From: Ophelia neglecta
Lineage: Eukaryota
Direction: 5' to 3'
Length of the DNA stretch: 64,000 bases
Assembly: GCA_965285935.1 (NCBI GenBank)
Contig: OZ260662.1
Span: forward strand, 6,076,001-6,140,000
Notes under the pieces: model-generated
Seen by the model: only the letters and a program-made list of their open reading frames with translations
The model's database searches: none
What the model was told of the DNA's origin: nothing
Part shown: in pieces, positions 3,880 to 63,485 of the stretch
Layout of the letters: the number at the start of each line of letters is the position of its first letter
How positions within the stretch are numbered: position 1 is the first letter of the stretch
Made by a program: the position numbers and the translations under genes

Positions 3880-5499
3880 ATAATTTGTCGTCTGCTCTCA
3901 ATGTGCAGAAGCGAACACCAAATAGCTTCCTTATCGTAAGTCGGTCCATTGTCGTCTGATGCCGCACCAAATTTAATTTTGGAGTTTTTCTAAGGCGGTT
4001 AACAGTGGATTACCCAGCATTTTCTGGTTAGTTGGTTTTCTGTATAGGCAGAGTCTATGAGCGTATCTCTGGTGACATAGCTCTCTGCTTACACGGGTCA
4101 AAACATACCCAGTACAAAGGTAGGTAAGTGGCCCATCGGGGTTTCATTATATACCTAATAATACGTACATTTTATTATTAACTGCACCTGTGTGGTCCAC
4201 CAGTTCATAGTTTTATTATTTGAAAAATAACCGGACGAAGTGCCCAATCCCTTTAGAATTACTGTTTGTATGAGTGCCAGGTGTCTTATTATGTGTATCA
4301 ACGGTAAGGGCCCCTTTCCAATCTGGTACTAACATCAAGTGAATATCAGGTGTCTGATGACCCAATCATTGCCATACCTGTGTAACCAGGGTGAAGCTAA
4401 TTATCTAACGAGCTAATCTCAGGTGTAATGTTACCTGACAATCTCTGTTCAGTGACAACCAGCCGGACAAGTCGGATTTTATCTAAGATATTTTCACAGT
4501 ATTTTCTTGACCAATATCTGGTAACAAAAGGTCAGTTCTTAGCCTGAACTCCTACAGTGACCTCATGTGTGCGTTGGAAAAACACGGCATCCAATCAGTT
4601 CTCGTCTTACTAAGGTTTTATAGTCTTCTTAGAGAGTTTCTCTCTCTTCAAATAAAGCCGGGTGTACGTGCACATTTAACACAGATAATTTTCTGCTGGT
4701 GGTTGATCATTTATAGTAAATGATAAGATCATCTGACCTCCCCTTCCGCCAACTCCCTTGACGGTTTTGTCTCCCCCCTACCGCCCTCCGTGGCGGGTTT
4801 TCGCCCCCCCCCCTCCCATAGTCAACCCCCCCCTCCCCTCCCCCCAACCGACCCCCTCCACATAACGTGTAGCCTCTCCAGCCTCTCTCTCCGTAAACAC
4901 AACACAAACCCACAAGCACCTAATAGTTCACTCCCCCACCCTCCCCACAAAACCCATCCAGGCAGTTGGAACTCTAATATTTGCTAGGTGGACCAGGTAC
5001 AGGGAACTCCGGTATGGTAACGCAGTGTCTTGTCAGCGGGCGAAAGGTAATTCGCTTTACAACCCGTAATTGCAGTCAAATAACGGTAGAGATCAGGGGA
5101 CTTCCAGAAAAAAATATATAATGTTCTAAAGAAGATGAGAGAGAAAGGTGTCTTATTAATATCCCATTGATGTGTGTCACAAACATTGCGAGAGACTTAT
5201 CAGCACTTCAGGTAAGAGGTGGTTACCTTGCAAACAGCCTCATCTTCTGACCCTCTTTGCACTGATGGTCCTTCAGACCATTTAACTGTTTTAAGTGTTC
5301 TCTTCGCACTGTAGGAACTTTGTACCTCATAGCTTTAATATAATATTCTACATTAATGATTTCAATAGTGGAATGCATTAGGGATACTTCTCCAAATCAT
5401 TATATGGATGGTAAGCTTAGTGGTTCTTCAAGAGCCATTAGTTGATGCACTTCTGCTTAATATGGCCTTTGATCAATAGACATGAACTCTCTCCTGTAG

Positions 5500-5680
5500 A
5501 AGGGACGGTACCTATAATCGCTGTTAACTGGGCTGGACGAATAGCTCTGCCACTCGGGGAAGGCGAGAGCGGACTTCAAGGCGGACCTTCTCCTTGTTAG
5601 ATGAACGCGGGCTGATGTCTACCGCCTAGTTCACCTTCCAGCATATACCAGGCGTACCTCATTCCACTTGGGTCAATTTC
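5500..5680 (-). mobile_element. SINE-like relic
   Basis: Reverse-strand ACCCAAGTGGAATGAGGTAC...TGCTGG resembles central domains of invertebrate tRNA-derived SINEs. No tRNA head is visible. Confidence 0.35.
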
Positions 5681-5803
5681 TGGACAGTTTTCTCGGTCCG
5701 TTCTCTGTAGTAGTCTTAACTCTTAGTCGGATTTAAATCAGGATTAATCAGGATTAAAGCGCTTGATCGGTGTTAACGTGCTAATCGGGGATTCTGGACA
5801 CTG

Positions 5804-6421
5804 GGCCCAGTCTCTAGAAGTGGTATTAACACTTATTTCGAATTAAAAACAGGATTAAAATGCTTAATCCGGCTTAACTTGCTAAGGCCAAAAAAAAATT
5901 ATGTTTCCTATTACATGGACAAAAAAAAATAGGGTAGGTAGAGAGGAAAAAGGTTTTTTTTTGGAATTTTTTTTTTGTAATGATCCTCGCGGTGTGGGTG
6001 TAATTTTTTCAGTATTTTATCATTAAATGTGGTTAACTTCACCAATTCTGAGAACTACAATGTTAAAACTACAATTGAACAGGTTTTATTTCTTAACTAC
6101 AACTGGAGTAAGTCGCGAGAATGAAATTTCTAGCGGACGGCGAGGGACGATGTTTCTTTGACTTTGGCGAGAATTGTTAATTTTTTTTAAGATGCTCATA
6201 AAAATTTTAGGACCGGGCACCTTTTGCTATATAGGGTTGGGCGACCGGAAACATAATTTTTTTTTTGGCCTAATCTGGGTTTCTGGGAGCTGGATTGGTT
6301 GTAAACTTAGCTATTATGGTCCTAAGCTGAACCCTGATCAATGGAAACACCGATTAACATGGCCTCAGCTAATCGGTAATAGGCAAATCTCACCCCAAAG
6401 ACCGCTACCAGAAACCAGGCC
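5804..6421. mobile_element. Harbinger-like MITE (host of the nested element)
   Basis: GGCCC...GGCC TIRs with CTG flanks. An uninterrupted copy lies at 9107-9343. Confidence 0.75.
5886..6270. mobile_element. PIF/Harbinger-type MITE nested in another MITE
   Basis: TIR GGCC(A)nTTATGTTTCC, 3-bp TSD TAA. Confidence 0.85.
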
Positions 6422-8878
6422 CTGGAGATAGCTTTATATTATTCTTGTGGAAATTCCACCCATTATAGTCATAGTAACGTCTATACAATGGTCACAATCG
6501 TGAAGTTTTTGTCACAATTCACTTTCAATTGTTTATATGATGCCTAAATAAATTACGCAACAAATATCAAGAGAAACAGCGCCCTTCAACGGTCATAGGA
6601 GCCATTACCGCCGCATTCAACAACTACTCACTTCTTTTATAACGAAAAACCCACTTAATCATGCACCAATGTTCTACCCAGTCCACTCTGCATCATTTAT
6701 CACCTCGCCGACCCCTATAAACCTTATTAAGTCGGTATAAAGTCACATATACACTCAATTAACGCCTTATAAAGCCACATTAGCCCCCTATAAACTAGAT
6801 TACCTATCCTGTTTACCACCTCACTCTTTTACAAAGTGTCATTGTGCGAATATTTGTAAATATCGCCCCAAATACCTACTTACGATATCAGATAAAGGTC
6901 TCTGAAATGATGCATTCATTGGGGGTCTTTTATTTGAAGATTTGTCGGACAAGGTGAGGGAGGGTGTAGATATCCAGCTTTCACTGGCAAATATATATAA
7001 GAAAGGAAAAGTGACGTTGCAGGATATTTGTTATGAGCATTTTATTGCGAAGAGAGTATTTACTAGCTCTGTCGATCATAAGAAGTCTCAATAAAATGTG
7101 TGATTACAGGTAAAAAGTGGGACAGGCCACCCGACATGCCATGTAAGTGATGTTCGATTATCTCTCGGGGCTATACATCATTTATGTATATATGTGGGCG
7201 AACGTTTTTATTTTAAACTGCAACATTCTGACACAATGTCTACTTCTCCAGAGGATAATTATACAATGGAAAACAATATATTTTTGTTCGGAAATAATAT
7301 TATTGAAGTATATACCCGCAGGAAATTTGGTAACCACTTGGTAGGACAAAGGGAAACATAAGTTTATTGACCTTACAAATTTCTATCAAATGGACAATGT
7401 GTTTTAGAACTGTTTCCTTAAGTTTGTATATTCAACATAATTATTCAAACTAGCAAACAATCAGTGTTAAGTGCATTATTTTACTTGCAAATTTGACTTG
7501 TATACACACTTAATGAAAGACTTATCCTGTCTCGGTGTGTGTTGATAGAGTTATGATGTGTTAGGCGGACATCTGATGTGCGAAATACAAATTTATAACC
7601 TCAAATCCGTGAATCAAGGAATAGAAAATATTCAGGTCCACAGCATGACAGTCTATTTATTCTAATTGCCAAGGAATTTGATATAGCCAGGCCGTAAAAT
7701 TTTATTCAAAAGATGTTACGGTACTTAAGATGGAACACGAGGAGTGACATAGAAATGGACAAGCGCTTTGCATGCATGTTAAAGCAGTTAGCTTCGTTTT
7801 TCTAAGGTTCTCCAGTCCTATAAGTACCAATAAAATAGTCCGTTGTCGTCGGTTTTTCATGATTTATTATAAACCCTAAAACAGATAACTTGATTATCAA
7901 AGTAGACGAATTTTGAATTTGAGACATTTCAACCTTGTCAGAAAAGAATCAAATCAATTTAATCAAATAGAAACTAGCTAACAGAATGTAGACTTTCAGC
8001 TGACATGTCCATGGCTCTTTAAAGACTGAAGACATTCAGACCATAAAACCGTTTTGAGCGCTGAAGACAATTGGTCAATAAACCCTACGGAGCATACAAT
8101 TGCTCAGAATGTGTCCCTCCGAGTTAAACTCCAACAGATCTCTATATAACAACCTCCTTTATTTCTGGTAATATGTAAATAACAGAGTTATAGAATTGTT
8201 AAACTGGATAGATTCACGGAATATGGCAATACGGAGATGGCAATGCAGCATGTTGTGGCAAATTAGGGCAGCAATTTTCTTTGTAGGCAGGGGTCCGCCA
8301 ATACTTTTGTTACCACATTTTAAAGTAATTAAAGAACAAGAGACATTGAACCAAAATAACGAGGGAGCGGGAAAACTTTGAACTGAAGTGGGCAGTAGAT
8401 AGGGAAAGGCACATGTTTTAAAGAATACACAAATAAATCGTTTCTTGCAGGTCGAGTGGAGCGTTTTAAATTGATTGTCCAGACATTGTGTGATCTCTAT
8501 GTGGCGGTATTCTGTGTTGTCGAGAGTCGTGTAGAGTTCCCATGGTCCGTATGTAGGTATCCTGGCCCGAAGTACCTCCCGGACAAATCAAATAGACCTC
8601 CCGGTAGGTCTCCGACAGCGTCAGGAATGATCAAAAACTGTTTGTCCCGTGTCAACAAATATCACAGATAGCTCCTGTCAACAATCGTCACTTGTCTGAC
8701 CGAGACAAGGCCGACTTCCTGTTTAAGACATGTTTCCTCCGACCCTCAATGCAGCCGACAGAATTCCTACAGTGGCCTGAAGGCTCACACTTTACAGGAT
8801 CTTGGTCAATATTGATGATATCGAACTTCAAATTCGAAATATATTTTCTGTGGAATGGTTGAAGTTCATACTTATCTA

Positions 8879-8975
8879 CAGTTGAATCTGTCATAAAGAC
8901 CACCTCTATAATCAGACCGCCTGTCAATTCAGACCACTAATATGAGGGCCATACTGTATACTCTCTATGTTAAAT
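8879..8975. mobile_element. Truncated CAGTGAAACC-family MITE
   Basis: Matches one half of 15292-15469 (AAAGACCACCTCTATAATCAGACC...). Confidence 0.7.
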
Positions 8976-9106
8976 ATGGCACAAAGTACAAAATGAAATA
9001 CGAATTACAGGGATAGGCATAAATAAGTTTAATTTTATCTACACGGTAATGACTTTAAGACTACATGTAGCTGCTGAACATTCAGTCACAGACAGCTTGT
9101 GCTCTG

Positions 9107-9343
9107 GGCCCGGTGTCTGGAAGCAGTCTTACCTCTTAACTAGGATTACAGTTCGGATTAAAATGCTTAATCGGTCTTAACTTGCTAGTTGTTGTATCTG
9201 GAAGCTGGATTCGGTGTGAGACCTAGCCATTTTGGTCTTTAACTAAATCTTGGTAAATGGAAACACCAATTAACACGGCCTCAGCTAATCGGTAATAGGC
9301 CAATCTTATCCCTGAACTTTAGACCGCTTCCAGAAACCGTGCC
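9107..9343. mobile_element. Harbinger-like MITE
   Basis: TIR GGCCCGGTGTCTGGAAGCAGTCT/AGACCGCTTCCAGAAACCGTGCC, CTG TSD. Confidence 0.8.
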
Positions 9344-9366
9344 CTGGCCTTATTCCCCCCATTACG

Positions 9367-9730
9367 TGTCGCCTATGGACACTTTTATACGACTGTTCCC
9401 GTCTATGCTGGCCTTCCTTTGTACTTAGCCTTTTCCTTATTATTACTTAACTTTTTTCTATCTATTTTAGGGCGTCCAATGTATACAGCCCTAACGGCGA
9501 TTATTGGCGTCCTGGTATCATCTCACTCGGTTCATTTTTCATTGACTATAATGTATTGTGTATATATAATACCAAATAAACGACCTACTACCTGTGATAT
9601 CCTATGTTTTATTGTTATTGTTATTATCATTATTCATCTTATTATTTATCTATTTAATAATTTATGTAGCGCCATACATCAATATTGTCGTTTGGCGCTG
9701 TACAGTGCACGATAAGATTTTAAAGATTCA
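9367..9730. mobile_element. Two tail-to-tail LINE 3'-end relics
   Basis: On +, a T-rich UTR ends in AATAAA plus short repeats (~9580). On -, an L2-like GCGC..GGCGCTACATAAAT end has an (AAT)n-like tail. Confidence 0.45.
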
Positions 9731-10868
9731 TACATACATAGACACAGTTAAGGTAAGTTATTGTAAGAGTATTAAGCCTTTTGGACAGAGGGCTATACGA
9801 AGCAATCAAGACCACACCTTCCTGTTGATGGTTTCACGTAGAGATTTGACTGTGAATAGCATATAGGAATGGGACGATTTCATATACGTTGTACGGTACA
9901 CAGCTGGGAGTATTCCTCCACCAACCGCAGCTCTGTACAATTCAAAGGGACACAAGACAACCCACAAGAGACCCTACCATAACATAACATGTACACGATA
10001 ACCAGTGGGAGTCTACCCAGGGCTGTTGTTCCTTTACAAGTCAAAGAAACAGATGTTCATTTAATAAGAATTGGCCGGACGACACAAGCCCACGGTTATC
10101 CCGAACACAAACCCTCGGTTACCCACGACACACATAGATTTGTTTCGACAAAAGCCTAATCACTGCTCTGGGCGAGGTTCTTCACTTCCTAATCACTTTT
10201 TATTTAATGAGAACAGGTTGTCTTATTCCCGAGCAGCAGGTCTAAGTATTGCTAATGATTCGGGAGGGCGGACACCTTGTATATACGGTTAATGACTTTA
10301 AAACTAATATTAGGACCCAATACCGCACTTAGAGAGGAATGGTGTTAATGTTTTTTGAGGTTTCAGCCCTCTGGCAAAGTAGAGATAGAACTCTCAACAT
10401 TCCTTTGAGACTGCATGGGCTGTTAATGATTCGCCACAGAACGAAAACATTGTTAAACCTTCCGACCACTGCCCGCGCAAACACAAGGTGTAAAGTCTTG
10501 TGATCTTTTTTGTCTTCATAATCTGAGACGAAAACCAACCTCGCCGCTAACAGGCCTGAAAGAGGCTTTGGTGTGTCCAAGGACTCCCAATAACGTTTAT
10601 CTTTGGGATATTGTCCGTTTTAAATGTTTACTTTTGGGATTTACAGCCTTTCTTGAATTGCCAATGCTTCCGAACTACTTTTTCTGAAGGTACATGATCC
10701 AGGTTTATTAGCCTCTAGCCGGCATTCGCATTCAAATCAAAGACAGACTGGATGTGTTTGTTTTGGAGATTCAGAAGGGGGCTATCAAGGGAAAGAGGCG
10801 AGTAACGAGGAAGCTTCTTCCCATCCCAACGACCGCATTCCCCATGTTTCTTTACCTGATCAATACTC

Positions 10869-11088
10869 GGCTTTGTGTTAACGGCGAAAGCGAAAGCTTC
10901 GATGAAAGCCGCATGGCCTCTTAAATTGAGCTAATGTGAACACAATAATAACCTTACCCTTTCCCATTTATATCAAAATCAAAATTGAGATGTCTGGGTT
11001 AAGGTTGGGTTAGAACTGATATTTTAGATTATTGTGACACCAATGCTGCTTTCGCAACAGCTTCCGCTTTCGCCGTTAACACAAAGCC
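10869..11088. mobile_element. 220-bp MITE with GGCT termini and 8-bp TSD
   Basis: Perfect 24-bp TIR GGCTTTGTGTTAACGGCGAAAGCG, TSD CAATACTC. Confidence 0.9.
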
Positions 11089-11308
11089 CAATACTCTTAA
11101 CAGTCAGTGTTATGATTTTAGTTGGCGGTTTGTTTCTCTGATCGCCTTCCGCGGGAGTCTTGAGAAACTGGCTTGAATCCTGAGTGTTTATTACCTCCGA
11201 TCACAGTCAATCTTGGTTGATTGCCGCCCATCTGTCGAGGTGTTAACAGCCGTGACATATCATTTCCCCTGAGACACCTATTCCGCCCTGCCTTATGTTA
11301 GGTAAATA

Positions 11309-11351
11309 GAGTGAAACCTGCCTTAAAGACCACCTCTATATTTAGACCACA
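11309..11351. mobile_element. Terminal fragment of a CAGTGAAACC-family MITE
   Basis: AGTGAAACCTGCCTTAAAGACCACCTCTATA matches the terminus of 15292-15469. Confidence 0.65.
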
Positions 11352-14002
11352 TGGAAATTAAGACCGAGGAGCGAGTTGAAAAAGCCAGGGCAAGGAAAAA
11401 CGAATGATTCTTAAAATACAAGAAGGAAAATGATCTACCTCGTTGAAAAAATAGTTTTCATTTAGTCTCTGGCTTGTAATTATATAATCATGGGAAGCCC
11501 ATTGGGATATACTTGCAATAACGGGAACTTCCCGACCTGTAGCCAATGTCAACTGTGCAAAACGCTCTTTTTTTTAAACTCGCTCCTCGACTTTTCATAT
11601 CGCCCCTCGCCTTTTCCAACGCGCTCCTCGCCACTCGACCGATTTAAACACTCCACCTTGAGTAGACAGGCGCTAGCATCTCATGCTATACTACCCTGCA
11701 CGTGCTGCCTAAATGCTTCCGGCTATCATGACCAAACTTTAGGGAAAGATTAAGTGCCCTGCTCTCCGATAGGGGATATGCACACCCCGTCATTTGACTT
11801 GGCACACATGCTGGGGTTTAAAGACAATGTTATGATTAAATGTACAACTTTGATCTGTGGTATTTAATCAAGGCAAGAAAATATTACAAGACAGCGTGAA
11901 CATCATAAGGTTAACATTGATAATGTACTGTGACATTTGCCTGTCGTTTCATCAAGTTCGGGAACGACAAGGAAGGCACTGCCAGTCTGACTACAGAGCT
12001 TCTCAAATTTAAAAAATGGTGGCGGTTAGCAGTTGATAAACAAGTATTGTCTGTTTGTTTGACTTTCTCTTTGGACACAGTCCATTAATTTATCTGAGTT
12101 TACATAGGCTTTCAGCCTAAACCAACAGAAAGTCCGCCCAAAAGATGATAAGTGGCCTATTTGGAGCAGCAGTATAAAACAGTGATTTTCCAGTAGATGA
12201 GCTTGTGTGTTCAGGAGTTTAGGACCATGAGTCTTAAGATAATATCATATAAAAGGCACGGGGAGTTCTCCATGGACAAGAATTGACTATCTCCCAGCGA
12301 TGAGTGATATTTAAACTAGCCCCATGTGTCCTATTATACGTATGTTATGTTAGTCAAAGCTCGTGTCTCGTGATACACAATGAAGTTAACTGGCTATCGA
12401 GTACCTGATTACCCAATCATTGTTATACCTGCGTAACCAGGTGTGGCTAATTATCTAACGAGCTTATCTCGGGTGTAAAATTGCCTAACTATTATCTACT
12501 GTCCGTGCCCAATTGTCAACAATGTCAGGCAAGTGCTGTTTTGTTGCAGATATTTTTACACAATTTTCTGGTCAATTGTTAGAAGAGAATGAGATGATTA
12601 TTCCCTCTTGGTCTTAAGTGGTGACCGTCTTTGCCCCACGCGGTGACGTCCGATGATAGAACATCAAGGCGCATGCAGTCAATTTCGCATCTTGTTATAT
12701 GTTTGTTGTCTCCATATAAAGTTTCTTGTGCCTCAGCATCCATAAAAGATTTCGCTTCTTCTTTATCGTAGACTCCAAACACTTATAAGCAATTCCCGTA
12801 TTAGAGGTGTATCAGCGAATGCTCCCGTGCTGCCGGCACTGCCCTGGACAAGCGCTGTGTGCCGGAATCTGTAGTTATTTATACCGAGCACAGGCGCCGC
12901 AGCACTGGAGCACTGGCGGCACTGCATCTATCTGATATGTATGTAGCTTGATGGAGTTCATTAGCAGATAAAAAAGACATAATCAACAGTCTGAGAGCTT
13001 TTTAAAGAAACCCTGCATAAATCTGTCTAAATGGGAAGCTGAACGCACAAAACAACAAAACGTGCGGCGGTTCCGTGGCCTTAGAGCGACAAATGCCAAG
13101 ACACACTTTTTATTTAAGAACAACATAGTATAAAGAAGGGTAGAATGTTGGGTGAGAAAAACAAGAACACGTGACTATACTAAGATTCAGATAGCCTCAA
13201 GAGACCCAATCAATCATGATGTTACGTTGGACAGTGCATGAGGTCCATTTACCGCGGTCATGTACTGTTTTGACTTTCCTCTACAAGCCGCTGCACTTAA
13301 CATATTCAAGGGAAACAGATCAACTTACACGACACCCGATCTAGCATTAACTTTAAACTAACACCACCCGAGGTCTGGCCCTTTTTGCGGTTCCTTTGCA
13401 ATTAAGTTTAAGCTCGGGAAATCAAAACAGGTGTTCATTTAATATGAATTGGCCACACGACTGAAACCCACGGCCAGTCCGACACCCCCTTCCGTTTGTT
13501 CTCCAGGTGTTTAATGGCGGATATGACCACGGCTATTCACTCCCTATTCATAGGCTAAAGTCCGAGTTAATTGTCTAGTTCCGTCCATTAGGGCTAAGTA
13601 TTATTAATCCTCTTGGAGGGCGGACGTTTTTTTTAACGTTAATTGGTTTAAGACTAAAATCAAGTATGGGTACCTCATATACAATATAAATGACAGTTAA
13701 GGAGTCGACCCTGAGCGTGGTGCTACGGTCCCTCTGACGTATTATGATTGGAGACACTCGTGGTTATAAGCCGACATCCCTTCCACCCGACTTAAGAGAT
13801 CTTTAGCGGCCTATTTCATTTGTCAATGGCCCCAAGCAGTGTTTACTAAGGGCTGTAGTCTCCTAAAGAAGAGGTGCAAGTGTGAATTTTGCTCGCGGGG
13901 CACTGTTTGACAAGACACCTCTCTTTAAAACACTTGATAAGCACAGGCAAAACACAAATACGTCTTTGAAACAAGCAGCTAGACAAGAGTCCTCATAGGG
14001 GA

Positions 14003-14631
14003 TCTGACGTCATTGGTGTGAGGAGAGGCTCTGACGTCATTGGTGTGAGGAGAGGCTCTGACGTCATTGGTGTGAGGAGAGGCTCTGACGTCATTGGTAT
14101 GAGGAGAGGCTCCGACGTCTTTGACGTGAACTCCAGAGTTCTCTGACGTCTTTGACGTGACCTCCAGAGTGACCTCCAGAGTTCTCTGACGTCTTTGACG
14201 TGACCTCCAGAGTTCTCTGACGTCTTTGACGTGAGCTCCAGAGGAGTTCTCTGACGTCTTTGACGTGACCTCCAGAGTTCTCTACGTCTTTGACGTGACC
14301 TCCAGAGTTCTCTGACGTCTTTGACGTAAACTCCCGAGTTCTCTGACGTCTTTGACGTGAACTCCAGAGTTCTCTGACGTCTTTGACGTGACCGCCAGAG
14401 TTCTCTTACGCCTTTGACGTGACCTCCAGAGTTCTCTGACGTCTTTGACGTGACCTCCAGAGTTCTCTACGTCTTTGACGTGACCTCCAGAGTTCTCTAT
14501 GTCTTCGACGTGACCTCCAGAGTTCTCTGACGTCTTTGACGTAACTTCCAGAGTTTTCTGACGTCTTTGACGTGACCTCCAGAGTTTTCTGACGTCTTTG
14601 ACGTGACCTCCAGAGTTCTCTGACGTCTTTG
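14003..14631. repeat. Compound minisatellite: 27-bp x4 then 31-bp x~17
   Basis: Units CTCTGACGTCATTGGTGTGAGGAGAGG and CTCTGACGTCTTTGACGTGACCTCCAGAGTT. Confidence 0.95.
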
Positions 14632-15291: not shown

Positions 15292-15469
15292 CAGTGAAAC
15301 CTGCCTTAAAGACCATCTCTATAATCGGACCACCTGCCAATTCAGACCACTAATATAATGACCATTGTATACACTTTCAGTGTAAAATAACCTGTGTAAA
15401 CAGACCACCTCTATAATCAGACCAGTATTTGCCAGTCCCATGGTTGGCTTTAATTCACAGGTTTCACTG
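15292..15469. mobile_element. CAGTGAAACC-family MITE
   Basis: Perfect 12-bp TIRs, TA TSD. Confidence 0.9.
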
Positions 15470-15671
15470 TATATATCCCATCGCCTTCCGCCTATCAGTA
15501 TCTTAAAATTTTATGTATGAAAGTTGGACTAAGCGTAGAAATAAACCCCCTAGAAGTATTCCCAGACCCCCCTCATTATATATGACTTAAATGAGTATTT
15601 TCTGTTGTTTTTAAGTTGCATGGCACCATTGGTATAAGAGTGACAAATATGCTGCTATTATAAAGCAAGTC

Positions 15672-15677
15672 TTTATT
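15672..15677 (-). terminator. Candidate polyadenylation signal AATAAA of the RhoGEF gene
   Basis: TTTATT on the + strand ~0.9 kb past the stop, in an AT-rich 3' UTR-like region. An alternative lies near 15935. Confidence 0.4.
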
Positions 15678-52970: not shown

Positions 52971-53000
52971 ACACAGGCATAAATGGGGAGGAGGTTATTA

Positions 53001-53175
53001 CAGTGAAACCTGTCTAATCAGGTCAGTCAAGGGACTGGGAAAAAACTGTCCATATTACACAGGTGACATTAATAGGCAGGATACACAGGCATTAATGGGG
53101 ATCAGACAATTATTTAGCGTCCGTAATGGGCAGGTGACCTTATTACACAGGTGACCACAAACACATGTTTTACTG
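53001..53175. mobile_element. CAGTGAAACC MITE, same subfamily as 2038-2216
   Basis: Shared body CTGTCTAATCAGGTCAGTCAA, TA flanks. Confidence 0.85.
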
Positions 53176-53280
53176 TATATGAATATGAAAGACACTAGCC
53201 TCGCGGCCAGTCCCTGCCTGCTGTTATATATTACATATACTGTATATCAGGAACTTGTTACACTTTACTGGTTTCTGTAG

Positions 53281-54387
53281 GGTAACATCCCAATATTGCG
53301 AAAGTCCCTTATTCCGAACGTCCGCTATTCCGAAGACCCGTTATTCCGAAAATAGGCTTCATCACTGCACATATTTGCGTGCTTTGCTCGACTTGCTTCA
53401 GTCCGAACGGCCCAAGCCGTCACTTGACCCGGTAGGCTGCTTCGATAGCGTCAAATCGACTGGGCTATTCGGCAGGAAAATAATTTTTTTGATGCAAATG
53501 ACAAAGTTGGACAAGCAACATGGCTCTCTGATTGACAAAAGAAAATCACTCGAATAATTGCATAATCTAACCGGAAGCAGGTCTTTATTCCGAAGGTCCG
53601 ATGTTCCGTTATTCCGAAGGTCCGATGTTCCGAAGGTCCTATGTTCCGAAGGTCCGATGGTGCGATAGGTTAATTGCGCAGTGTTCTAAGATGCCAAAAT
53701 TGCCCTTTGATCGGGATTGGATGTTATTCGCCAGCAATTTAAATTTCAACCAGATTTTTAGAGGTCCATCCCGTCAATTATTTTATTCTGTAGCAGCGGT
53801 ATTTCGAAAACTCGAAACTAATGCAGTTTGGTACAGAAGTAGACACAATACAAGGCGCTGGTCATTTATTATATAAGGGGCGGGGTTTTTATATACACTT
53901 GAGGGAGGCTGCCACAGAGACTACGCAGCAGGAAATAGGGAGATGCTCACAAATAATAATGCAGAACCCCTGAATGTAGACGCAGCTGGAACAAAATATT
54001 TCCTTTAAACACTAAAAAATAAGATGTTGCTTATTTCATTTGACAAAAACCAAATTCCAAAATATTAGGAGGCGTTTAGGACTTGAAAAACGGGAGTGGA
54101 TACATTGCAGACACAGAGAAATCACTGATAAAGAACAGTCCGTTAAATCTGTCCAAAATAAACGGAAACCAACAGCCATAGGCCCACACACGTCAATCCA
54201 CAAACAGAATATAAAAGGGTAAGTAAGATATAAAATGGAAACAGTAGCCTAGCAAGCACTGATGATGGTAGTTGCTCTGGCTAGTAAGAATGGTTCACGT
54301 TGTCGTAACAAAGCCTTTTTCGGAACAACGGACCTTCGGAACAACGGACTTTCGGAACAACGGACCTTCGGAACAGCGGGATGCCCC
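53281..54387. mobile_element. Foldback/MULE-like non-autonomous element with 15-bp subterminal tandem repeats
   Basis: (TTCCGAAGGTCCGnnA)n at the left end and internally, with inverted (CGGACCTTCGGAACAA)n at the right end. No TSD was found. Confidence 0.75.
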
Positions 54388-54409
54388 CAATCTAACCAAT
54401 ATCACTAGA

Positions 54410-54622
54410 AACCCCGCCCACTCTTCAGCCTCCCCCCACAGACTTGAACTGCGCTGGGCCACGAGTTAAACCTCCCCCCCCCTTCAGCCTCCCCGACAGA
54501 CTTAAAGTGTGCTGGGCCATGAGTTAAACCTCCCCCCCCTTTTCAGCCTCCCCCGACAGACTTAAAGTGTGCTGGGCCATGAGTTAAACCTCCCCCCCCC
54601 CTCTTTTCAGCCTCCCCCGACA
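54410..54622. repeat. ~60-bp tandem repeat x3.5
   Basis: TTCAGCCTCCCC(C)GACAGACTTAAAGTGTGCTGGGCCATGAGTTAAACCTCCCCCCC. Confidence 0.9.
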
Positions 54623-55689
54623 GGAAAAGGGGCGGGATAGGACGGAGGGGGAAGGAGGGGGGTTGGGGATGGATAAGATGGAGTGGGAAAAGGGGTGGGA
54701 TAGGTAGGAGGGGGTCAGAGGAAAGGGATTGGGGATGGAGGAGGGAGGAGAGATGAATGAGAGGGAGTGGAAAAAGGGGCGGAATAGGACTGAGGGGGAA
54801 GGAGGGAGGCCAGAGGAAAGGGTGGAAGATTGAGGAGGGGTGGAATAAGAAGATGGGGGGTCAGGGGAAAGGGTGGGGATGGAGGGGTCTGAAAATGGGG
54901 AGGGTATAAATGAGAGGGAGTGGAAAAAGGGGTGGGATAGGAATGAGGAGGAAAGAAGAGTGGGGGCCAGGGGAAGTGTGCAGGGTGAGGGGGAAATGAA
55001 CAGGGCCTCAAGAGGGATAGTGAAGGAGTACAGTTAGTGGGGAAAGGAAGGGGATTGAGAACGAGCTGGGGATTCTGCGGTGAATAGGCAGGAGCTGGCT
55101 GTTGTACAAAGTAGAGGAGGGCGGAAAAGGCCAATGAATTAGTGACGAGAGGGAGATGGCTACAGTTGGCAGAGAGAAAGTAGGAGGGCAGTGATTTCTG
55201 GAAGCCACATAACAGCCAATGCACTGGTTCCTTGTGAACATGGACTGGTTCCTTGTTAACACGTAATGGTTCCTTATGGTAAACATGGACTGGCGACTTG
55301 TAAACATACCCTGGACTGGTTCATTGTAAACAGGCTATTACGTGCTCCCTTGTAAACCAAGCACAATCCAACAGTGTATGTACCAGGCGCCAGTCAGGAG
55401 GCTGTAATCCTCAGCCCCAGATTACTTGAGAAGTTGTTTAGTCTCAGACAAACATGACAATATGATTTTCTCCTCCGCTCAATACATGAGCATGTAAACC
55501 TGTCCAAGTAACCTGGCCACCACAACTGTGTATGTACTCTAACACGTATGTGTATACTGGGCCTTCAGGGGATCTGACACAAACAGGTCAATCTGAGGTA
55601 AATCTCCTGATAATCTCCAGATAATCTCCCGATAATATCCAGATAATCTGCCTTGGTCATGATATACATCATTAGGTCCAGGTGTCCAC

Positions 55690-55920
55690 CATCTTACCTG
55701 CCAGAGTAAACTAGCAGTGTCAATCATTTTACCTGTCAGTCAATCAGCCGTGCCGAGCATCTTACCTATCGCAGTCAATCAGCCGTGCCCACAATCTTAC
55801 CTGCCAGAGTCAATCAGCCGTGCCCACCATCCTACCTGCCAGAGTCAATCAGCCGTGACATCACCTTACCTTTCAGAATCGATCAGCCGTGCCCATCATC
55901 TTACCTGTCAATCAGCTGTT
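55690..55920. repeat. Degenerate ~35-bp tandem repeat
   Basis: ATCTTACCTGCCAGAGTCAATCAGCCGTGCCCACC. Confidence 0.85.
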
Positions 55921-55989
55921 CCATTCTGACTGACATTTACTATCAATTCTTACCTTTGTACCTGCCTGCCCTGTGTTGTTAACACCTGA

Positions 55990-56240
55990 GTATGTCAGGT
56001 AGGAACACAACCAATGTAAGCTGCACTGAATAACAATTTTGTCAATTACAGAATTCCACAGAATAGCAGATTTGTGAACAATAGAATGTTGTAGTGCAGC
56101 CAGTCTCGCTAATGGTACATGAAGTCTATGTGACTGGCTGGTAGAGTGACTATGGATTTGTGAATAATGTATATAGATCCTTGAGACATTCAGGCAACAA
56201 ACCATGACGTATCTTGAACATAAAGATAAATACCCCCTGT
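55990..56240 (-). mobile_element. CR1-like LINE ORF2 C-terminal relic
   Basis: Translation HSHSTSQSHRLHVP...SIVHKSAILWNSV...SL resembles the HxHxTR...LWNxL...S C-terminus of CR1-group RTs. Confidence 0.7.
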
Positions 56241-58325
56241 TCATTAATATTCAGCAATCTGGGACTACATGGTCCCAGTTAGCTCCTCCTGGATGTAATG
56301 TAGTAGTATAATGTTCTGTGAGTAGTAGTACAATGTCTTGTGAGGCCCATAGATGTGAGAGTGTAGATGCACAGGGATACAACTGGGGTTTGGAGTTGGC
56401 AGGGCTCATGGAAAACCAATATCAGTGGTGTTACACACTTTCACTGATGTTACCAGTCAGTTGACAATAACCCAGATATTCAACTCCGATCCCCTTATAG
56501 TACCCCCCCCCCCCCGCCCCCCTCCATGACCCTTGGGCAGAGGACAACCATGGACAGAAGGGTCCACTTCAAGGACTTTGACTATATGATCTGTGATTTC
56601 CTCAACCGTCAAGACGTGGATAGTAATATAGCAAAAGCAATTTGGTGGGCTACATCCCAGCAGTCTCATGTAGAATGGTTCAAACCCCATTCCCACCCTC
56701 TCTCTCCTCTCTCCAAATGTCCCCTCTCAGTCATCTTATCGACATAGCGTTCAGTTGTCAGAGATAACCTGGCTGGTTCCCTGCTGTCTGCCTGTCACTG
56801 CCCCTGATAGACTGGTACCACCTGTGTGCCAGATTGTAAACCCTTCATAAACCAGTCTACGCCTTGGTTAAATACATTACCTAAATAATCACCCCATTGT
56901 ACTGGGACTGAGCTGCCCACTGTACCAGTATAACAGGGTTTATAGTGTCCACATGGAGACAACCCAGAGTTCCCCACTTGACCACACCTCTCATGTATCT
57001 CTGATGTCAAAGACACATGAACAGTACTTCATTCCATGTTATTGACATATCATAGTCAGTTCCTCGCACGCTATTAAAAAGTGGTAACATATTTATAGCA
57101 GACAGAAAATGAGAGACAATATCCCTAGGGGGGGGGGGGGGGGGCATGGGCGTGTACAGGTTGCGGGAAATGTGGGGGATTGGAGGAAATGGGGGGGGGG
57201 GCACCATGCTGGTAAAGTCCGGGGCCAAAATGTCCTACATTCCTCTATGCAGTTAGTTAGCTCTTTCAACACTACCCCTTTAGTAACAGACACTTAGAGT
57301 TTAAAAAAAAATTGCTTTGAAAATTGATAAGAATGGTGACCTTCATTTTTGGTTTTACTTCAAGTTATATCAAAAAGGAGAAAGGTCTTATTCAAAATCT
57401 GAAAATTTCTTAGCAACAACGGTTTATCTCAATGAGTTAGCTGTTTGTTGCATAAATACGGGATGTTGCTATTGATATTGATAAAACTTCACATCGTATA
57501 ATCTAAATCTCTTAGGTTACAACTGATGCAGTGAACAGAGAAATGGGCTGCTCCATCCAGAATGATTATATATAGTAAATAACGCAGGATTGTAAGACAC
57601 CAAGGACAACTGACTGGACTTCAAAATAGTCTATATACCATCTAACCAGGCCTAACATAAGAGGGGCCCTACAATACAGGGGCCACTGTACTGCCATCTC
57701 TGAAGTGAGTGGGTACTTAGTCATTTGTAGGTTTGAATGCTGTCTTGGCAGCCTCGGGGAGATCCCCTAATCATTACGTTATTATCATCACACTAACCAC
57801 TAGAGATAAGTTTGAGATAGATATACATGACCTGCTACCACCAGACTGATAACCTCTCTCTGAGATGATAACCCTACACACCGTGGGCACACCAGTACAA
57901 ACCACCAACCAAGACTAACCCCTCTGATATCTGTAGATATCTGTGGATATCTATATCAAGGCTCATCATGTCCCTGTCTTATTGTCTGTCTATCTGTTTA
58001 TCTGTCTGGGTAAGCCAGTATCATAACATAATTATCACCACTAACTGACTTTCTGGGGTACATCAAAACCTCATCATCATAAAATGACACCTCCATCCCT
58101 ATGCCATCACTATGCTATTCCTATGCCACTGATAAAAACATAAAGAACCGTTGGAAAATGAATTCATCACAGACTCGTGATCAGATTTGAATTTAACACC
58201 AATCACTGACAGCTATTGTACATGGAATGCAAATTAACCCATTTATCACCTTTAGTATAGATGTTTATATCCACGGATAACACAGCTAAATCTGTGAAGT
58301 AGTACGACACACAAGTAGTATTAAG

Positions 58326-58684
58326 TCTTACCCATGTTTTAACTTTGTAACTTTACTTAGTGAGTATTCTTGTGTTTCGAAATGTTGTTGTAGGCCTAGG
58401 ACTGATGTGTATTTTGCATTGCTTAAATTATAGAGATAGATTGCTCTAGGTTTCGATGTATTCATCTCCTCATGAACTTCATTATTAATTAATAACGTTT
58501 ATTATTTTTTAGTTTCCTGGTGGATATCTCCTACTCGTATTACTATTTCTGTGTTCCTGTGTTCTTTCTCTTGGATTTGTAAATTATGTCAATAACTACA
58601 TACACATATATTGTCGGCGAGCCGCCGACTCCAATTCCTTGAAATCCCAGAGTCATAGCCACTGCTACAGGAAAACGGTGACAT
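58326..58684 (-). pseudogene. Relic of exon 1 (MSPFSCSSGYDS...), frameshifted and split by a 272-bp insertion
   Basis: Aligns to 26101-26191 with a net -4 nt indel. The insertion at 58338-58609 lies between the exon body and the retained ACATGG|GTAAGA donor. Confidence 0.85.
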
Positions 58685-59265
58685 GGTGACGGCCGAACGC
58701 ACGTACACACAGGTGACGGACGAACGCACGTACAGATAGGTGACGGACGAACGAACGTACAGACAGGTGACGGACGAACGCACGTACAGACAGGTGACGG
58801 ACGAACGAACGTACAGACAGGTGACGGACGAACGCACGTACAGCCAGTTGACGGACGACCGAACGTATAGACAGGTGACGGACGAACGTACGTACAGACA
58901 GGTGACGGACGAACGCACGTACAGACAGGTGATGAACGAACGCACGTACAGCCATTTGACGGACGCATGCACGTACAGACAGGTGACGGACGAACGCACG
59001 TACAGACTTGTGACGGACGCACGCACGTACAGACTGGTGACGGACGCACGCACGTACAGACAGGTGACGGACGAACGCAATTACAGACAGGTGACGGACG
59101 AACGAACATAGACATGTGACGGACGCACGCACGTGCAGACAGGTGACGGACGAACGCACGTACAGACAGGTGACGGACGAACGCACGTACAGACAGGTGA
59201 CGGATGAACGCACGTACAGTCTGGTGACGGACTCACGCACGTACAGACAGGTGACGGACTCACGC
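58685..59265. repeat. 27-bp minisatellite, ~21 copies
   Basis: GGTGACGGACGAACGCACGTACAGACA. Confidence 0.95.
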
Positions 59266-60034
59266 ACCAACTGACAATGTCTATGAGATGAATACAAGAT
59301 ACAGTCCAAAAGCATCAAGTATAAACAGTAGTCGCGCTGTCAAAGCTTCTGGTTAGATTGCCCGCTGTTAATCCATCGAGATCCTCTTCATACAATCTCC
59401 CGGTGAACGCAACACAAGCTTTGATCTAATGACAATGTATTCCAATCAGATGCACAGATAATGTCCAGATTGCCCAGTGCGGAGTCAGCCGGTCAGCTAC
59501 CTTTTTGTCCGATCCACACAGCTACTGACAGAGAAGTGCTTAAGCTGATTGGCTGGGCAAATAACATGGATTTCAATATATTGAAGTTTCATTGATTATT
59601 CTGCGAGTTAGTGTGGCTTAGGGGAGATTTTCTAAGCATTGTTACTATTAAAGGATATGTTGCTATGGGACAATTACCCTAAGGTCCATATAAAATAAAC
59701 ACCATACCTAACAAAAAAGGTGTACGCAGGACAATTATCCAATATTTGTCCTTTGGGGTAAAAAAATACTCGTATACAAGCGCTTGCATATTTGATGTAT
59801 CCAAAGTGCCGCGTAAAGTGTATTTATTCCATAGGTCAATGTCTTTTGAAGGTATTTTGGACAACTCAATGTACTCTTAGCTTAATTTAAACAAATAAAA
59901 TACATTTATTTGTACTTCTGCGAGTACTTACTGGCAGAAGTTACACATAAAACCCAGTGAAAATATTAAAGTTGCCAGGTAGCCTGATAGTTCCAATACC
60001 ATGTGCTATATGAACTAAAAGTAGATAAATTCAG

Positions 60035-60320
60035 GGTCGATTTTAGGGGCCGTTGGCCATTTATTTACATCAATATAAGGGGAGATTTTAGGGGCCTTTG
60101 GCCGACTTACATCAATATAAGAGGGATTGAGGGGCCCTTTTACGTTTATTTACATCACTGTAAAGGGAAATTTTAGGAGCTCCTGGCCGGTTAGCTACAA
60201 CAACATAAGGAGATATTTTGGGGATCCTCGGCAGTTTGCTAGCATCAATATTGGGCCCGATAAATGGATTTCAGGGGCCTTTGGCAGTTTGCCGACATCA
60301 ATCACAATTGTAGGGACCCT
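60035..60320. repeat. Degenerate ~42-bp tandem repeat
   Basis: Recurrent ACATCAATATAAGGG..TTTTAGGGGCC.TTGGCC. Confidence 0.8.
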
Positions 60321-63229
60321 AAAGACCCCAGAGTGTTACACTGTAAGCAGCTTCTATTCACTAAATTCGTTTTTCATCATAAAGAATTCACACCAACATC
60401 ATTGTTTATGTCAGTCACTATGTGATGAAGGAAGCTCTTTACACGGAGTCTGTGAAGTCATCAAAGAGAAATAATTGTAAGAACCAGATTAAAATGCATT
60501 AAACATCAGGTGACACAGGTGTCTTCCGATTCAAAGATCCTACTTCATTAACTTGCTTTAAAACATGCCTCAGTAATAGGATCCTTCGTTCACAGAAACC
60601 GACAATACGCGTTATGTAAACTTATTACAATATCAAGACACCATGCCTAACCCCGGGCGGGCCAAGAGGCCTCCAGGACTACAGAGAACATACAAGTCTC
60701 CGCCCCCCTCCCCAGACGTGTTAACAGCCACTCTAAAGCTACTCATATGGCAGACTTCAATCATTGTCCTCATCATATTATGTACGTCCGCCACACCCGG
60801 CTTTCAGTCATGGCATGAGACAAGAAACATACAATACAAGATTATGTAAAGTAAGAGCACAGCCCATAACAATGGACAGTGTGGTGAATTCCATGGGACT
60901 CTAGGGTTATAACGAAACTTACGGATAATTCTTATTTTTAACGGATGATTTATTATGACAATAACGTTTAAGACAATTTTATCTGTTCTTAACACAGAGG
61001 GAGCCAAGTCCAAGAGAGGTAGATCTACTTCTAAGCACACAAAGAGTAGCTGATCGCAAACTGCTGTATTCATGGTATTTGCAGCTTTTTTCGTAAGAAA
61101 AAACGATACATGGTACCCGGCTAAATCATTACACAATTCACAGCACTAAACAAACGACTCAATGATCAACGTGTGACAGAGAAGAAATATATCCTTGGAG
61201 AGTGTAGGACGGTCTAAGCTCTCTCAAATATAATTCTGAAGATAAATATGTCTTAATAAACACTAGACAAAATCTGAAATCAAGGATAAATTGTCAATCA
61301 CACAATTTTCCACAAATCAAGTTCGCTTTTATAATCATGAACGATGATGTTAGGATTTTCTTTAACCAATGCTACAATTATTAACAAATCAAATTTGAAA
61401 ATTGAAGATTTGATTATTTTGAATCATTAATGCTGGTTTCAGTAAGCATTGATATCAGCTTCCTGGGAACCTGTCTTACCCCGCTCCACACCGGGACACC
61501 GTGGGAGACTCTCTATTCGTGGCAATCTTCTTCCCATCACAGAAGCAGATTACTATCTGAAACACAGATAAAAATTAGAAAATATTTAAGTTGCTTCACC
61601 GCATCTTTCCTTCGTAGCAGAGTTAGGGTTCCATCCGCAGAGCTAGCGCACCATTGTCAGCGAGCAGGGCGTAGAGGAAGGGAACATCGCATCTAGGTAA
61701 CACCCCCTTAGAACTTGGAATTAAGGAGCTCAGTGGTAATTAGTCTGATAATCAATTAGTCAATATAGTTTGGAGGTCACTGGGGTGTGTGACTCAAAGG
61801 GGTGTCATATGTCTGGAGGAAGCAGTAGCTGAATATGAGAGGAGACAGCTATGACGAAATCTACATTAATAATAGGCCATCATATCAGTGATTTTATAAC
61901 CCAACCCCATCACATAAATCCCTCTTTCGTTCTAGGTATATATTGGCCTGATGAGGGTAACCATTATGTTTATTCTAGCAAATACTAAATGTCGCTTTTG
62001 CCACAGCTTTCGCTGTTTACACAAAGCTGCTGAGAGTTTTGTAAAGAGCTATCTCATGGTAGGGTTTGAGGTCCATTAAACGTGGGTATATTCAATTTGG
62101 TTCTCCAAATACACCGGTAGATATTCTCACTTCAATATTGGATCGAATTACTGCAATCATATGTATTTAATTATTCTTACAACTTGACTTAATATTCTGG
62201 AATAAACGATTTAATTTGACTGTTTATATGTATAAAAACTCTTCAGCTGTTTGGGATTGTCTGTCTCAGATTTACATGTCAGATCTCTATTAGACCCCTG
62301 GGAGGGATATACAGAGATAATTATATGATAGGGTAACACCCGGCAATATCTGGAATGAGAGGGGTGTCAGTTTCACAGTCCTCCTCCTGAGAGAGGAATC
62401 AGGTAACAGCTTTCCCAATACTTACGTCTATCCCCTCTGGATTACATTCAATTAGATCAGTGGAAACCTTGGTGTCAGCTTACTACCTATATTCTTGGGG
62501 AAATATCAGGTTTTTTGTTCTTCCCAAACCCCACCACATTATGCCCCACTCCCCCTTCCCGTCCTCCATCCAAAGGGCCTCAAGCAAACAATCTATAAGT
62601 ATAATTATGCAGTAATCAGTTTCAACCTTCCTCTGGAGGTTATCAACACAGATTTCAAACTAAAAGCTCCTCATTAACTTTCTTTATTCCATATTCAAAT
62701 CTCAGCTAACTAGATATTGACCGCTTCATTAAGTTATTAAAGTAACCCACTATCAGAACGGCGGTCAAGCACTCATAATCACCGATAACAATTACTACCA
62801 GAACGAGGTAAATACCAATGATAATATTTTGAAGGTCATGGGAACGTAGCAGTGTGATTGACGCCCCCACTTTACCTATGTTGGCTGGGAATTGTAGGAT
62901 TCAACAGAAATAATTGGGAAGGACTGTTAACCCCTCGGGCCCTAACAGTATAATCCCTGAGATAAATAACCAGCCCAAGAAAAACACAAGTTGCCCATAA
63001 TTTAAGGTTATTTGAAGCATTATAAAAGCGCCCTTGCAGATATAGAAAAGACAGGAGAAGAGAACAATCATAAGCCATCAGTGGTTTGGGTTTCCAGATA
63101 CATGTATGTTTAGATGAAAAGGACACAGCGAGAGGATGCCGAAAATTAAATATATCCAACTCCAGGGTACTAAATTGTGAAATGGAGAACGGTTTAAGTT
63201 GTTTCCATTATTACTGGTAAGATACGGAC

Positions 63230-63485
63230 TTCCAACCATGGGAGGTAACAGGTTGACTAACAGATAAAATATCTCACCATGTAATCATGTTACAGGTGTT
63301 TGTAGCTTTCAACTCCTATCAATAAACTTGCTACAAATCATGGGAGGTAACCGGTTGACTGGCAGATGAAATATATAACCATGTAATCAGGTTACAGGCG
63401 TTTTTAGCTTTGAACTCATGTCAGTGCTATTATTTCTGACACTACTCTTGCTAAATCATGGGAGGTATCTGATTTACTGGCAAAT
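63230..63485. repeat. ~105-115-bp tandem repeat x2.5
   Basis: CATGGGAGGTAAC.GGTTGACT recurs at ~63237, ~63339 and ~63457. Homologous to 29945. Confidence 0.75.

What the first reader, a model, noticed from the sequence alone, without database searches (positions are those of the whole stretch)
4330..63270. Hidden ~30-kb ancient tandem duplication: functional RhoGEF locus plus an exon-stripped twin
Seen: more than a dozen non-repeat blocks in 4.3-30 kb recur in the same order and orientation in 34.9-63.3 kb, roughly 65-85% identical by eye. In the twin, the exons downstream of the PDZ exon (16588-19837) are not recognisable, the PDZ exon is halved and exon 1 is broken. Introns, promoter and 3' flank remain alignable. 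Inference: the divergence looks too deep for an allelic haplotype, although a gap separates the copies. The dead copy lies directly upstream of the live gene and could now serve as its regulatory landscape.
Basis: partly seen in the sequence, partly recalled or inferred. Interest (0 to 1): 0.8.

Follow-up and report, generated by a model that had tools for sequence, protein, structure and literature searches.

The report
Decayed gene copy in RhoGEF array
The two similar 30-kb halves of this window are real ancient paralogues, one a working PDZ-RhoGEF gene and one a dead copy, but they are two units of a larger multi-copy gene array rather than a private twin pair, which makes this an ordinary case of gene birth and death.

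Summary
About 20 non-repeat blocks (5.5 kb, 60-80% identical) recur in the same order in 4.3-30.2 kb (A) and 34.9-63.3 kb (B). The chain scores 2434, against 0-142 for a reversed-sequence null.

A and B are not each other's closest relatives. The whole window is the inverted copy of a 98-kb two-gene module at C2:5.926-6.024 Mb (67 blocks, 32.8 kb aligned). B pairs with unit G1 (16.2 kb, 72%) and A with unit G2 (16.5 kb, 71%). A likelihood test rejects A+B as sisters (delta lnL 200). A third, younger module copy (91-93%) lies at 5.82-5.86 Mb, and at least 24 DH-bearing paralogues lie on this chromosome.

B is an unprocessed pseudogene. It has a 4-nt frameshift in exon 1, has lost the 5' half and the splice donor of the PDZ exon, and carries one 5.6-kb deletion that removed every downstream exon. 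A is under purifying selection (dN/dS 0.20-0.25).

The unique flanks of the N gap are adjacent in both other modules, which supports the join. No read data could be obtained. The family resembles PsGEF (C2-PDZ-RhoGEF), but the local units lack C2. The regulatory-landscape idea is untested, and no conservation signal supports it. The scan has not noted this before on other DNA.

The parts
1332..63299 (.). Right arm of an old inverted segmental duplication. The whole stretch lines up, in reverse orientation, with C2:6,024,133-5,926,045.
   Evidence: chain score 17978, 67 blocks, 32.8 kb aligned.
4328..30203 (-). Unit A (type 2): live PDZ-DH gene with its 3' flank (4.3-16.5 kb) and 5' region (20.3-30.2 kb).
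   Evidence: best partner is unit G2 (chain 8755, 16.5 kb, 70.8%).
26107..26191 (-). Gene A, coding part of exon 1 (85 nt, ATG to a G|GTAAGA donor).
   Evidence: It is 91% identical to G2 against a background of about 71%.
20029..20241 (-). Gene A, open frame holding the PDZ exon.
   Evidence: Pfam PDZ E=2.2e-9, above the cut-off. 91-93% aa identity to G1, G2 and G3.
18054..19935 (-). Gene A, linker exon and four DH (RhoGEF) exon frames: 19426-19935, 18950-19243, 18706-18978, 18408-18668, 18054-18167.
   Evidence: Family HMM positions 292-577 are covered contiguously. Single-exon Pfam RhoGEF hits are weak, E about 0.02.
16591..17785 (-). Gene A, Ser-rich middle exon (17213-17785), a presumed PH-region exon (16913-17095) and the C-terminal exon (16591-16824). 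All are open.
   Evidence: Conserved in G1, G2 and G3. dN/dS 0.10-0.42. Pfam does not confirm a PH domain.
32047..32192 (.). N run between units A and B. It is intergenic, so reading frame is not an issue.
   Evidence: The unique flanks 31258-31754 and 32338-32755 are adjacent in both other modules.
34939..63276 (-). Unit B (type 1): unprocessed pseudogene unit.
   Evidence: best partner is unit G1 (chain 9220, 16.2 kb, 72.0%). The quartet test gives ((A,G2),(B,G1)).
58604..58684 (-). B, relic of exon 1: 81 nt instead of 85 (4-nt deletion, frameshift after codon 13). The donor context changed to T|GTATGT.
58680..59267 (.). B, 27-bp x 22 minisatellite grown from the short GTCC-rich motif just upstream of the exon-1 ATG.
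48790..48882 (-). B, surviving 3' half of the PDZ exon (residues 38-68). It has four B-specific replacements at positions invariant in the live copies. A 13-nt deletion removes the exon end and the GT donor.
48882..49067 (-). B, place where the 5' half of the PDZ exon is missing: 185 bp here against 504 bp in G1.
48713..48741 (.). B, junction of the 5.6-kb deletion. These 28 bp correspond to G1 5,945,820-5,951,422, which holds every exon after the PDZ exon and the stop codon.
32797..32983 (+). SINE-like dispersed repeat. Eight other copies lie in the window, among them 2222-2404, 15289-15475, 25300-25483 and 28572-29212. It is not part of the duplication signal.

Best explanation
The window holds two neighbouring units of a lineage-specific array of PDZ-RhoGEF genes (PsGEF-like, without a C2 domain) on chromosome C2 of a spiralian animal. 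An old tandem duplication produced two unit types, type 1 and type 2. The two-unit module [type 1, type 2] was then copied in inverted orientation, giving [A = type 2, B = type 1] in this window; noncoding K is about 0.35-0.37. Much later the module was copied again in direct orientation, giving [G1',G2'] and [G1,G2] with K about 0.07-0.10. After the inverted copy was made, B died. It carries a 4-nt frameshift in exon 1, has lost the 5' half of the PDZ exon, has a 13-nt deletion of that exon's end and donor, and has one 5.6-kb deletion that removed all DH and later exons. Its sister G1 and the neighbour A stayed intact. Shown: the unit relationships, the lesions, and purifying selection on A. 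Inferred: the order and mechanism of the events, and that B has no function.
For: Inverted chain over the whole window: score 17978, 67 blocks, 32.8 kb. Pairwise chains: G1-B 9220, G2-A 8755, A-B 2365. On 3.07 kb of non-SINE blocks shared by all four units, identity is B-G1 81%, A-G2 77%, A-B 71%. Topology ((A,G2),(B,G1)) has lnL -10521 against -10722 for both alternatives, the AU test rejects both, and informative sites split 170/12/34. Independent blocks sort the same way genome-wide: 7338-8695 is 78-79% identical to G2 and G2' but 67-68% to G1, G1' and B, and 57649-58336 has full-length matches only in G1 and G1'. G1-G1' is 90.9% and G2-G2' 93.2% identical. B's lesions. A has dN/dS 0.20-0.25 over about 590 codons, with dS 0.49-0.62. 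Array size: 25 DH1 matches, 24 of them on C2 between 5.82 and 14.43 Mb. Gap: the unique flanks occur three times in the genome, once per module, and are adjacent each time.
Against: Gene bodies carry mosaic signal (A groups with G1, G3 and G2 at 50, 29 and 23 informative sites), so exchange between paralogues occurs, and the history rests on the flanks. Only 264 kb of the array could be fetched, so G1' and G2' are known from about 5 kb each plus search coordinates. Alignable blocks are a biased subset, so the K values are underestimates.
Confidence: 0.85

Rival explanations
1. A simple local tandem duplication made A and B in place. Later gene conversion with G2 and G1 made each look closer to a distant unit.
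For: A and B are adjacent, share orientation and line up in the same order. Exchange between paralogues does occur in the gene bodies.
Against: The B-G1 and A-G2 similarity spans 39 and 28 blocks across whole 30-50 kb units, including flanks, at a uniform 71-72%. Conversion would leave high-identity tracts, not evenly old divergence. The A|B junction itself lines up with the G1|G2 and G1'|G2' junctions. Topology test: delta lnL 200.
Confidence: 0.04
2. Assembly artefact: the two halves were wrongly joined at the N run, or one half is an uncollapsed haplotype or a misplaced copy.
For: An N run of 146 letters separates the halves. Its right edge lies in a satellite-like repeat with many genome-wide copies, which is a typical place for assembly trouble.
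Against: A-B divergence of 28-33% in aligned noncoding DNA, with only about 20% alignable, is far beyond allelic. The unique sequences on either side of the run are neighbours, in the same order and orientation, in both other module copies: 434 and 815 bp apart there, 584 bp here. A false join would not reproduce that.
Confidence: 0.04
3. B is dead as a coding gene but is kept as a cis-regulatory landscape or a non-coding RNA source for gene A.
For: Geometry only. B lies 7-37 kb upstream of A's start. Some B blocks are 84-91% identical to G1.
Against: In the quartet tree B's branch (0.135) equals those of A (0.135) and G2 (0.150), so it shows no extra constraint. About 51% of B aligns to G1, and about 54% of A aligns to G2. 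In the parental module a live G1 occupies the same place upstream of G2, so the arrangement is not a product of B's death. No Rfam family matches. Expression could not be tested.
Confidence: 0.07

Closest known systems
PsGEF, protostome-specific GEF (Higuchi et al. 2009, PMC2684095; listed as protostome-specific in Fort and Blangy 2017, PMC5499878)
   Same: The paralogue on C8 encodes C2 + PDZ + RhoGEF in that order. Its C2 and PDZ domains are closest to those of RGS3 and its DH domain is closest to Rac/Cdc42-type GEFs such as P-Rex and intersectin, as the paper describes. The best database relatives are spiralian proteins with the same three domains. Loss of the RhoGEF exons has a precedent in Daphnia PsGEF.
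   Different: The PsGEF paper describes one PsGEF gene in each species it examined; here there are at least 24 linked DH-bearing copies. The five units near the window have no detectable C2 exon. Identity to the nearest named-architecture proteins is only 29-35%. Orthology to Drosophila or Lottia PsGEF was not tested directly.
Unprocessed (duplicated) pseudogenes in tandem gene arrays, i.e. birth-and-death evolution (general knowledge, for example globin and olfactory-receptor clusters)
   Same: B keeps the introns, flanks and promoter region of its parent type and carries several independent disabling lesions, while sister copies stay under purifying selection.
   Different: Nothing essential. 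The single 5.6-kb deletion gives it an 'exon-stripped' look.
Large inverted segmental duplications (general knowledge)
   Same: Two arms of about 62-98 kb lie in opposite orientation around a 53-kb spacer that holds another family member, G3.
   Different: The arms are only about 71-72% identical and half alignable. There is no sign of the arm-to-arm homogenisation typical of young palindromes. The right arm is about a third shorter.
PDZ-RhoGEF / LARG (ARHGEF11/12)
   Same: A PDZ domain lies N-terminal to a DH domain. The PDZ domain matches ARHGEF11 PDZ structures at E about 2e-7.
   Different: No RGS-like domain lies between PDZ and DH. The PDZ and C2 domains are closer to RGS3 and the DH domain is closer to P-Rex and intersectin.

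Membership tests
PsGEF (C2-PDZ-RhoGEF) | RhoGEF (DH) domain | tested here: met
   A's exon frames cover family-HMM positions 385-577 (E 1e-23 to 1e-3). The C8 paralogue matches Pfam RhoGEF at 2e-16. Single exons of A are sub-threshold in Pfam.
PsGEF (C2-PDZ-RhoGEF) | PDZ domain N-terminal to DH | tested here: met
   Pfam PDZ 2.2e-9 and PDZ_6 2.3e-10 on 20029-20241(-), above the cut-offs.
PsGEF (C2-PDZ-RhoGEF) | C2 domain N-terminal to PDZ | tested here: not met
   A family HMM run against every open frame of 20 aa or more in 264 kb found nothing for HMM positions 1-209 in A, B, G1, G2 or G3. tblastn with the C8 N-terminus found nothing either. The feature is met only by the C8 paralogue.
PsGEF (C2-PDZ-RhoGEF) | Orthology to named PsGEFs of Drosophila or Lottia | not tested
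   No named PsGEF sequence was returned by a tool. The best hits are unnamed spiralian proteins with the same domains.
Unprocessed pseudogene (copy B) | Homology to a parent gene that includes introns and flanks | tested here: met
   39 same-order blocks, 16.2 kb, shared with unit G1.
Unprocessed pseudogene (copy B) | Disabling lesions in the coding sequence | tested here: met
   Frameshift in exon 1, loss of half the PDZ exon and of its donor, and a 5.6-kb deletion of all later exons.
Unprocessed pseudogene (copy B) | No functional transcript | not testable with these tools
Private two-copy tandem duplication (A and B as direct twins) | The two copies are each other's closest relatives | tested here: not met
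   ((A,G2),(B,G1)) is favoured by delta lnL 200. Chain scores are 9220 and 8755 against 2365.
Inverted segmental duplication | Long same-order similarity in reverse orientation to a second place on the same chromosome | tested here: met
   Window 1332-63299 against C2:6,024,133-5,926,045: 67 blocks, 32.8 kb.
PDZ-RhoGEF / LARG | RGS-like domain between PDZ and DH | tested here: not met
   No Pfam RGS hit on the linker frame 19426-19935(-) or on the C8 protein.

The most novel reading that the evidence does not exclude
The remains of B (promoter and exon-1 region, intron and 3'-flank blocks) are not inert but have been co-opted as upstream regulatory DNA or a non-coding transcript for gene A. 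On this reading the death of one array member rewired its neighbour.
Probability: 0.07. Interest if true: 0.5.

Novelty: new member of a known kind. Interest (0 to 1): 0.3.

Why it matters
As a duplication plus pseudogene this is routine genome biology. Its value lies in two corrections. First, a pair that looks like a private ancient twin in a 64-kb window turns out, in whole-genome context, to be two units of a nested array: type duplication, then inverted module duplication, then direct module duplication. Second, 'exon stripping' reduces to one deletion. The wider point is of moderate interest. The PsGEF paper describes one PsGEF gene in each species it examined, and here a PsGEF-like family has expanded to at least two dozen linked copies that have dropped the C2 domain and show exchange between paralogues. 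That could interest people working on Rho signalling or on gene-family evolution in spiralians.

Tried and rejected

The G1'/G2' module and the DNA to the right of the window were therefore not examined in full.

(3) C2-domain exons were sought with tblastn and a family HMM and not found in any local unit. This rules out B as a Drosophila- or Daphnia-like 'short' C2+PDZ form.

(4) Pfam did not detect a PH domain in the exon frames 16913-17095 and 16591-16824.

(5) Rfam and tRNA scans of the whole window found nothing.

All searches were exon by exon, and dN/dS was summed from per-exon counts.

(7) High-copy repeats as the source of the A/B blocks: rejected for the main blocks, accepted for the two SINE blocks.

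(8) One search listed self-matches whose coordinates overlap the N run. I did not fetch or read those letters.
Full report
**Layout.** The window is G000:C2:6,076,001-6,140,000, in a 762-Mb genome of 223 contigs. It has 42% G+C and one N run at 32047-32192. The best protein relatives are from annelids, a nemertean and a bivalve, so the host is a spiralian animal. Its own proteins are not in the protein collection.

**Checking the observation.**
- Comparing 1-32046 (A) with 32193-64000 (B) gives a plus/plus chain of 22 same-order blocks. They total 5.9 kb at 60-80% identity and run from 4328-30203 to 34939-63276. The chain scores 2434, against 417 for the best minus-strand chain and 0 and 142 for a reversed-B null.
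- Two of the blocks are copies of a 187-bp SINE-like unit with more than 3000 first-look candidates in the genome. They do not count.
- The remaining blocks are not dispersed repeats. Blocks 9915-10861, 7338-8695, 20037-21232 and 57649-58336 match only inside a cluster on the same chromosome.

**The gene.**
- It lies on the minus strand.
- Frame 20029-20241 is a PDZ domain (Pfam 2.2e-9).
- Frames at 18950-19243, 18706-18978, 18408-18668 and 18054-18167 cover the DH domain of a family profile without gaps.
- Three further open frames follow (17213-17785, 16913-17095, 16591-16824). They are conserved in the paralogues.
- The coding part of exon 1 is 26191-26107, from the ATG to a G|GTAAGA donor.
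- Against three paralogues, A shows dN/dS 0.20-0.25 over about 590 codons with dS 0.49-0.62. A has therefore been a working gene for most of its history.
- Pfam did not confirm a PH domain.

**Genomic context changes the reading.**
- The PDZ and DH exons have many paralogues. There are 25 DH1 matches, 24 of them on C2 between 5.82 and 14.43 Mb.
- I fetched C2:5,876,001-6,076,000. Together with the window this gives 264 kb.
- That span holds four complete genes: G1 (5.946 Mb, +), G2 (5.988 Mb, +), G3 (6.039 Mb, +) and A (-). It also holds the relic B.
- The whole window, 1332-63299, aligns in inverted orientation with C2:6,024,133-5,926,045 in 67 same-order blocks totalling 32.8 kb.
- Pairwise unit chains:

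| Pair | Chain score | Aligned | Identity |
|---|---|---|---|
| G1-B | 9220 | 16.2 kb | 72.0% |
| G2-A | 8755 | 16.5 kb | 70.8% |
| G1-A | 5368 | not quoted | not quoted |
| G1-G2 | 5081 | not quoted | not quoted |
| G2-B | 2727 | not quoted | not quoted |
| A-B | 2365 | 5.6 kb | 67.3% |

- On 3.07 kb of non-SINE blocks present in A, B, G1 and G2, identities are B-G1 81%, A-G2 77% and A-B 71%.
- The topology ((A,G2),(B,G1)) beats both alternatives by 200 log-likelihood units. Informative sites split 170, 12 and 34.
- Independent genome-wide searches agree. A's block 7338-8695 is 78-79% identical to G2 and G2' but 67-68% to G1, G1' and B. B's block 57649-58336 has full-length matches only in G1 and G1'.
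- A third module, G1' and G2' at 5.82 and 5.86 Mb, is 91% and 93% identical to G1 and G2 in the gene bodies.

**History inferred from this.**
1. An old tandem duplication made type-1 and type-2 units.
2. The two-unit module was copied in inverted orientation, giving A (type 2) and B (type 1); K is about 0.35-0.37.
3. The module was copied again in direct orientation; K is about 0.07-0.10.

Gene bodies show mosaic signal: A groups with G1, G3 and G2 at 50, 29 and 23 informative sites. This points to exchange between paralogous coding regions, so the history rests on the flanks.

**What happened to B.** Relative to its sister G1:
- The 28 bp at 48713-48741 stand for G1 5,945,820-5,951,422. That is one 5.6-kb deletion which removed every exon after the PDZ exon, including the stop codon.
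- The 5' half of the PDZ exon is gone: 185 bp here against 504 bp in G1.
- The surviving half, 48790-48882, has four replacements at positions invariant in all four live copies. A 13-nt deletion takes away the exon end and the GT donor.
- Exon 1 (58684-58604) is 81 nt instead of 85. This shifts the frame after codon 13, and its donor context is altered.
- A short motif upstream of the ATG has grown into a 27-bp x 22 minisatellite.

B is thus an unprocessed pseudogene with at least four independent lesions. The 'stripping' of exons is one deletion, not selective removal.

**The N run.**
- It is intergenic, so frame is not at issue.
- The unique sequence on its left (31258-31754) and on its right (32338-32755) each occur three times in the genome, once per module.
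- The two are adjacent in the same order and orientation in the other two modules. They lie 434 bp apart at the G1|G2 junction and 815 bp apart at G1'|G2', against 584 bp here.
- A false join would not reproduce this, so the join is supported indirectly.
- The 141 bp right of the run are a satellite-like unit with many copies elsewhere.
- The same call listed self-matches whose coordinates fall inside the run. I did not fetch or read those letters.

**Family.**
- A paralogue on C8 (L033:79-2073) is a single 665-aa open frame with C2, PDZ and RhoGEF domains.
- This is the architecture that defines PsGEF, the protostome-specific GEF (PMC2684095).
- Its C2 and PDZ domains are closest to RGS3's, and its DH domain is closest to P-Rex and intersectin, as that paper describes.
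- The five units around the window have no detectable C2 exon. I therefore describe them as PsGEF-like PDZ-DH genes and do not file them as full members.
- The paper's Daphnia case, in which the RhoGEF exons were deleted and a C2+PDZ protein was left, is a parallel in kind. B cannot be such a short form, because it lacks C2 and half of PDZ.

**The regulatory idea.**
- B does lie upstream of A. In the parental module, however, a live G1 sits in the same place upstream of G2.
- In the quartet tree B's branch (0.135) equals A's (0.135) and G2's (0.150).
- The alignable fraction is similar: 51% for B-G1 and 54% for A-G2.
- Nothing indicates constraint beyond neutral decay. I give this reading about 7%.

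**Verdict.** The kind is known: birth and death of genes in a segmentally duplicated array. The expansion of a PsGEF-like family is the most interesting by-product.

Noticed in passing
L033:79-2076 (G000:C8:26,126,850-26,128,847): A single uninterrupted 665-aa open frame encodes C2 + PDZ + RhoGEF and ends at the end of the DH domain. The C2-chromosome copies split the same region into at least six exons. It could be a retrocopy or one very large exon of the ancestral-type gene. No poly(A) tract was obvious downstream.
   Followed up: partly
G000:C2:5.82-14.43 Mb: At least 24 linked places hold both a PDZ and a DH exon of this family, including near-identical sets at 7.04-7.14 Mb and 14.14-14.43 Mb. 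The PsGEF paper describes one PsGEF gene in each species it examined, so this is a large lineage-specific expansion.
   Followed up: partly
window 32797-32983; also 2222-2404, 8877-8974, 11306-11364, 15289-15475, 25300-25483, 28572-29212: A 187-bp SINE-like unit has more than 3000 first-look candidates genome-wide at 85-90% identity. Three copies lie head to tail at 28572-29212. ARAGORN finds no tRNA in it.
   Followed up: partly
window 9915-10861 and 13286-13679; 41179-42121 and 45399-45771; also 7966-8695, 39116-39821 and 44203-44531: Each unit holds an internal duplicate of parts of its own 3' flank, older than the unit duplications. This gives four copies in the window.
   Followed up: partly
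window 16555-20224 compared with G1, G2 and G3: Phylogenetic signal in the gene body is mosaic. A groups with G1 in 17267-17732 and 18405-18930, and with G2 in the PDZ exon. In the DH1 exon A is 96.6% aa-identical to G3. This suggests gene conversion among coding regions while the flanks keep the true history.
   Followed up: partly
window 35495-36385, 52115-52633, 58680-59267, 14110-14632: Four large minisatellites: 34 bp x 26, 58 bp x 9, 27 bp x 22 and 31 bp x 16.5. Three are in B. They create long spurious open frames.
   Followed up: no
window 32193-32333 and the N run 32047-32192: The right edge of the N run is a unit of about 140 bp that forms tandem arrays on C5, C8, C9 and C12. A genome search listed self-matches at coordinates inside the N run, so the tool's copy of the genome may hold letters there. 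They were not fetched or read.
   Followed up: no
window 2583-3414: A pyrimidine-rich (CCCTCC-type) tandem array with periods of 27, 54 and 81 bp gives long Pro- or Gly-rich open frames on both strands. It lies at the inner end of the inverted arm.
   Followed up: no
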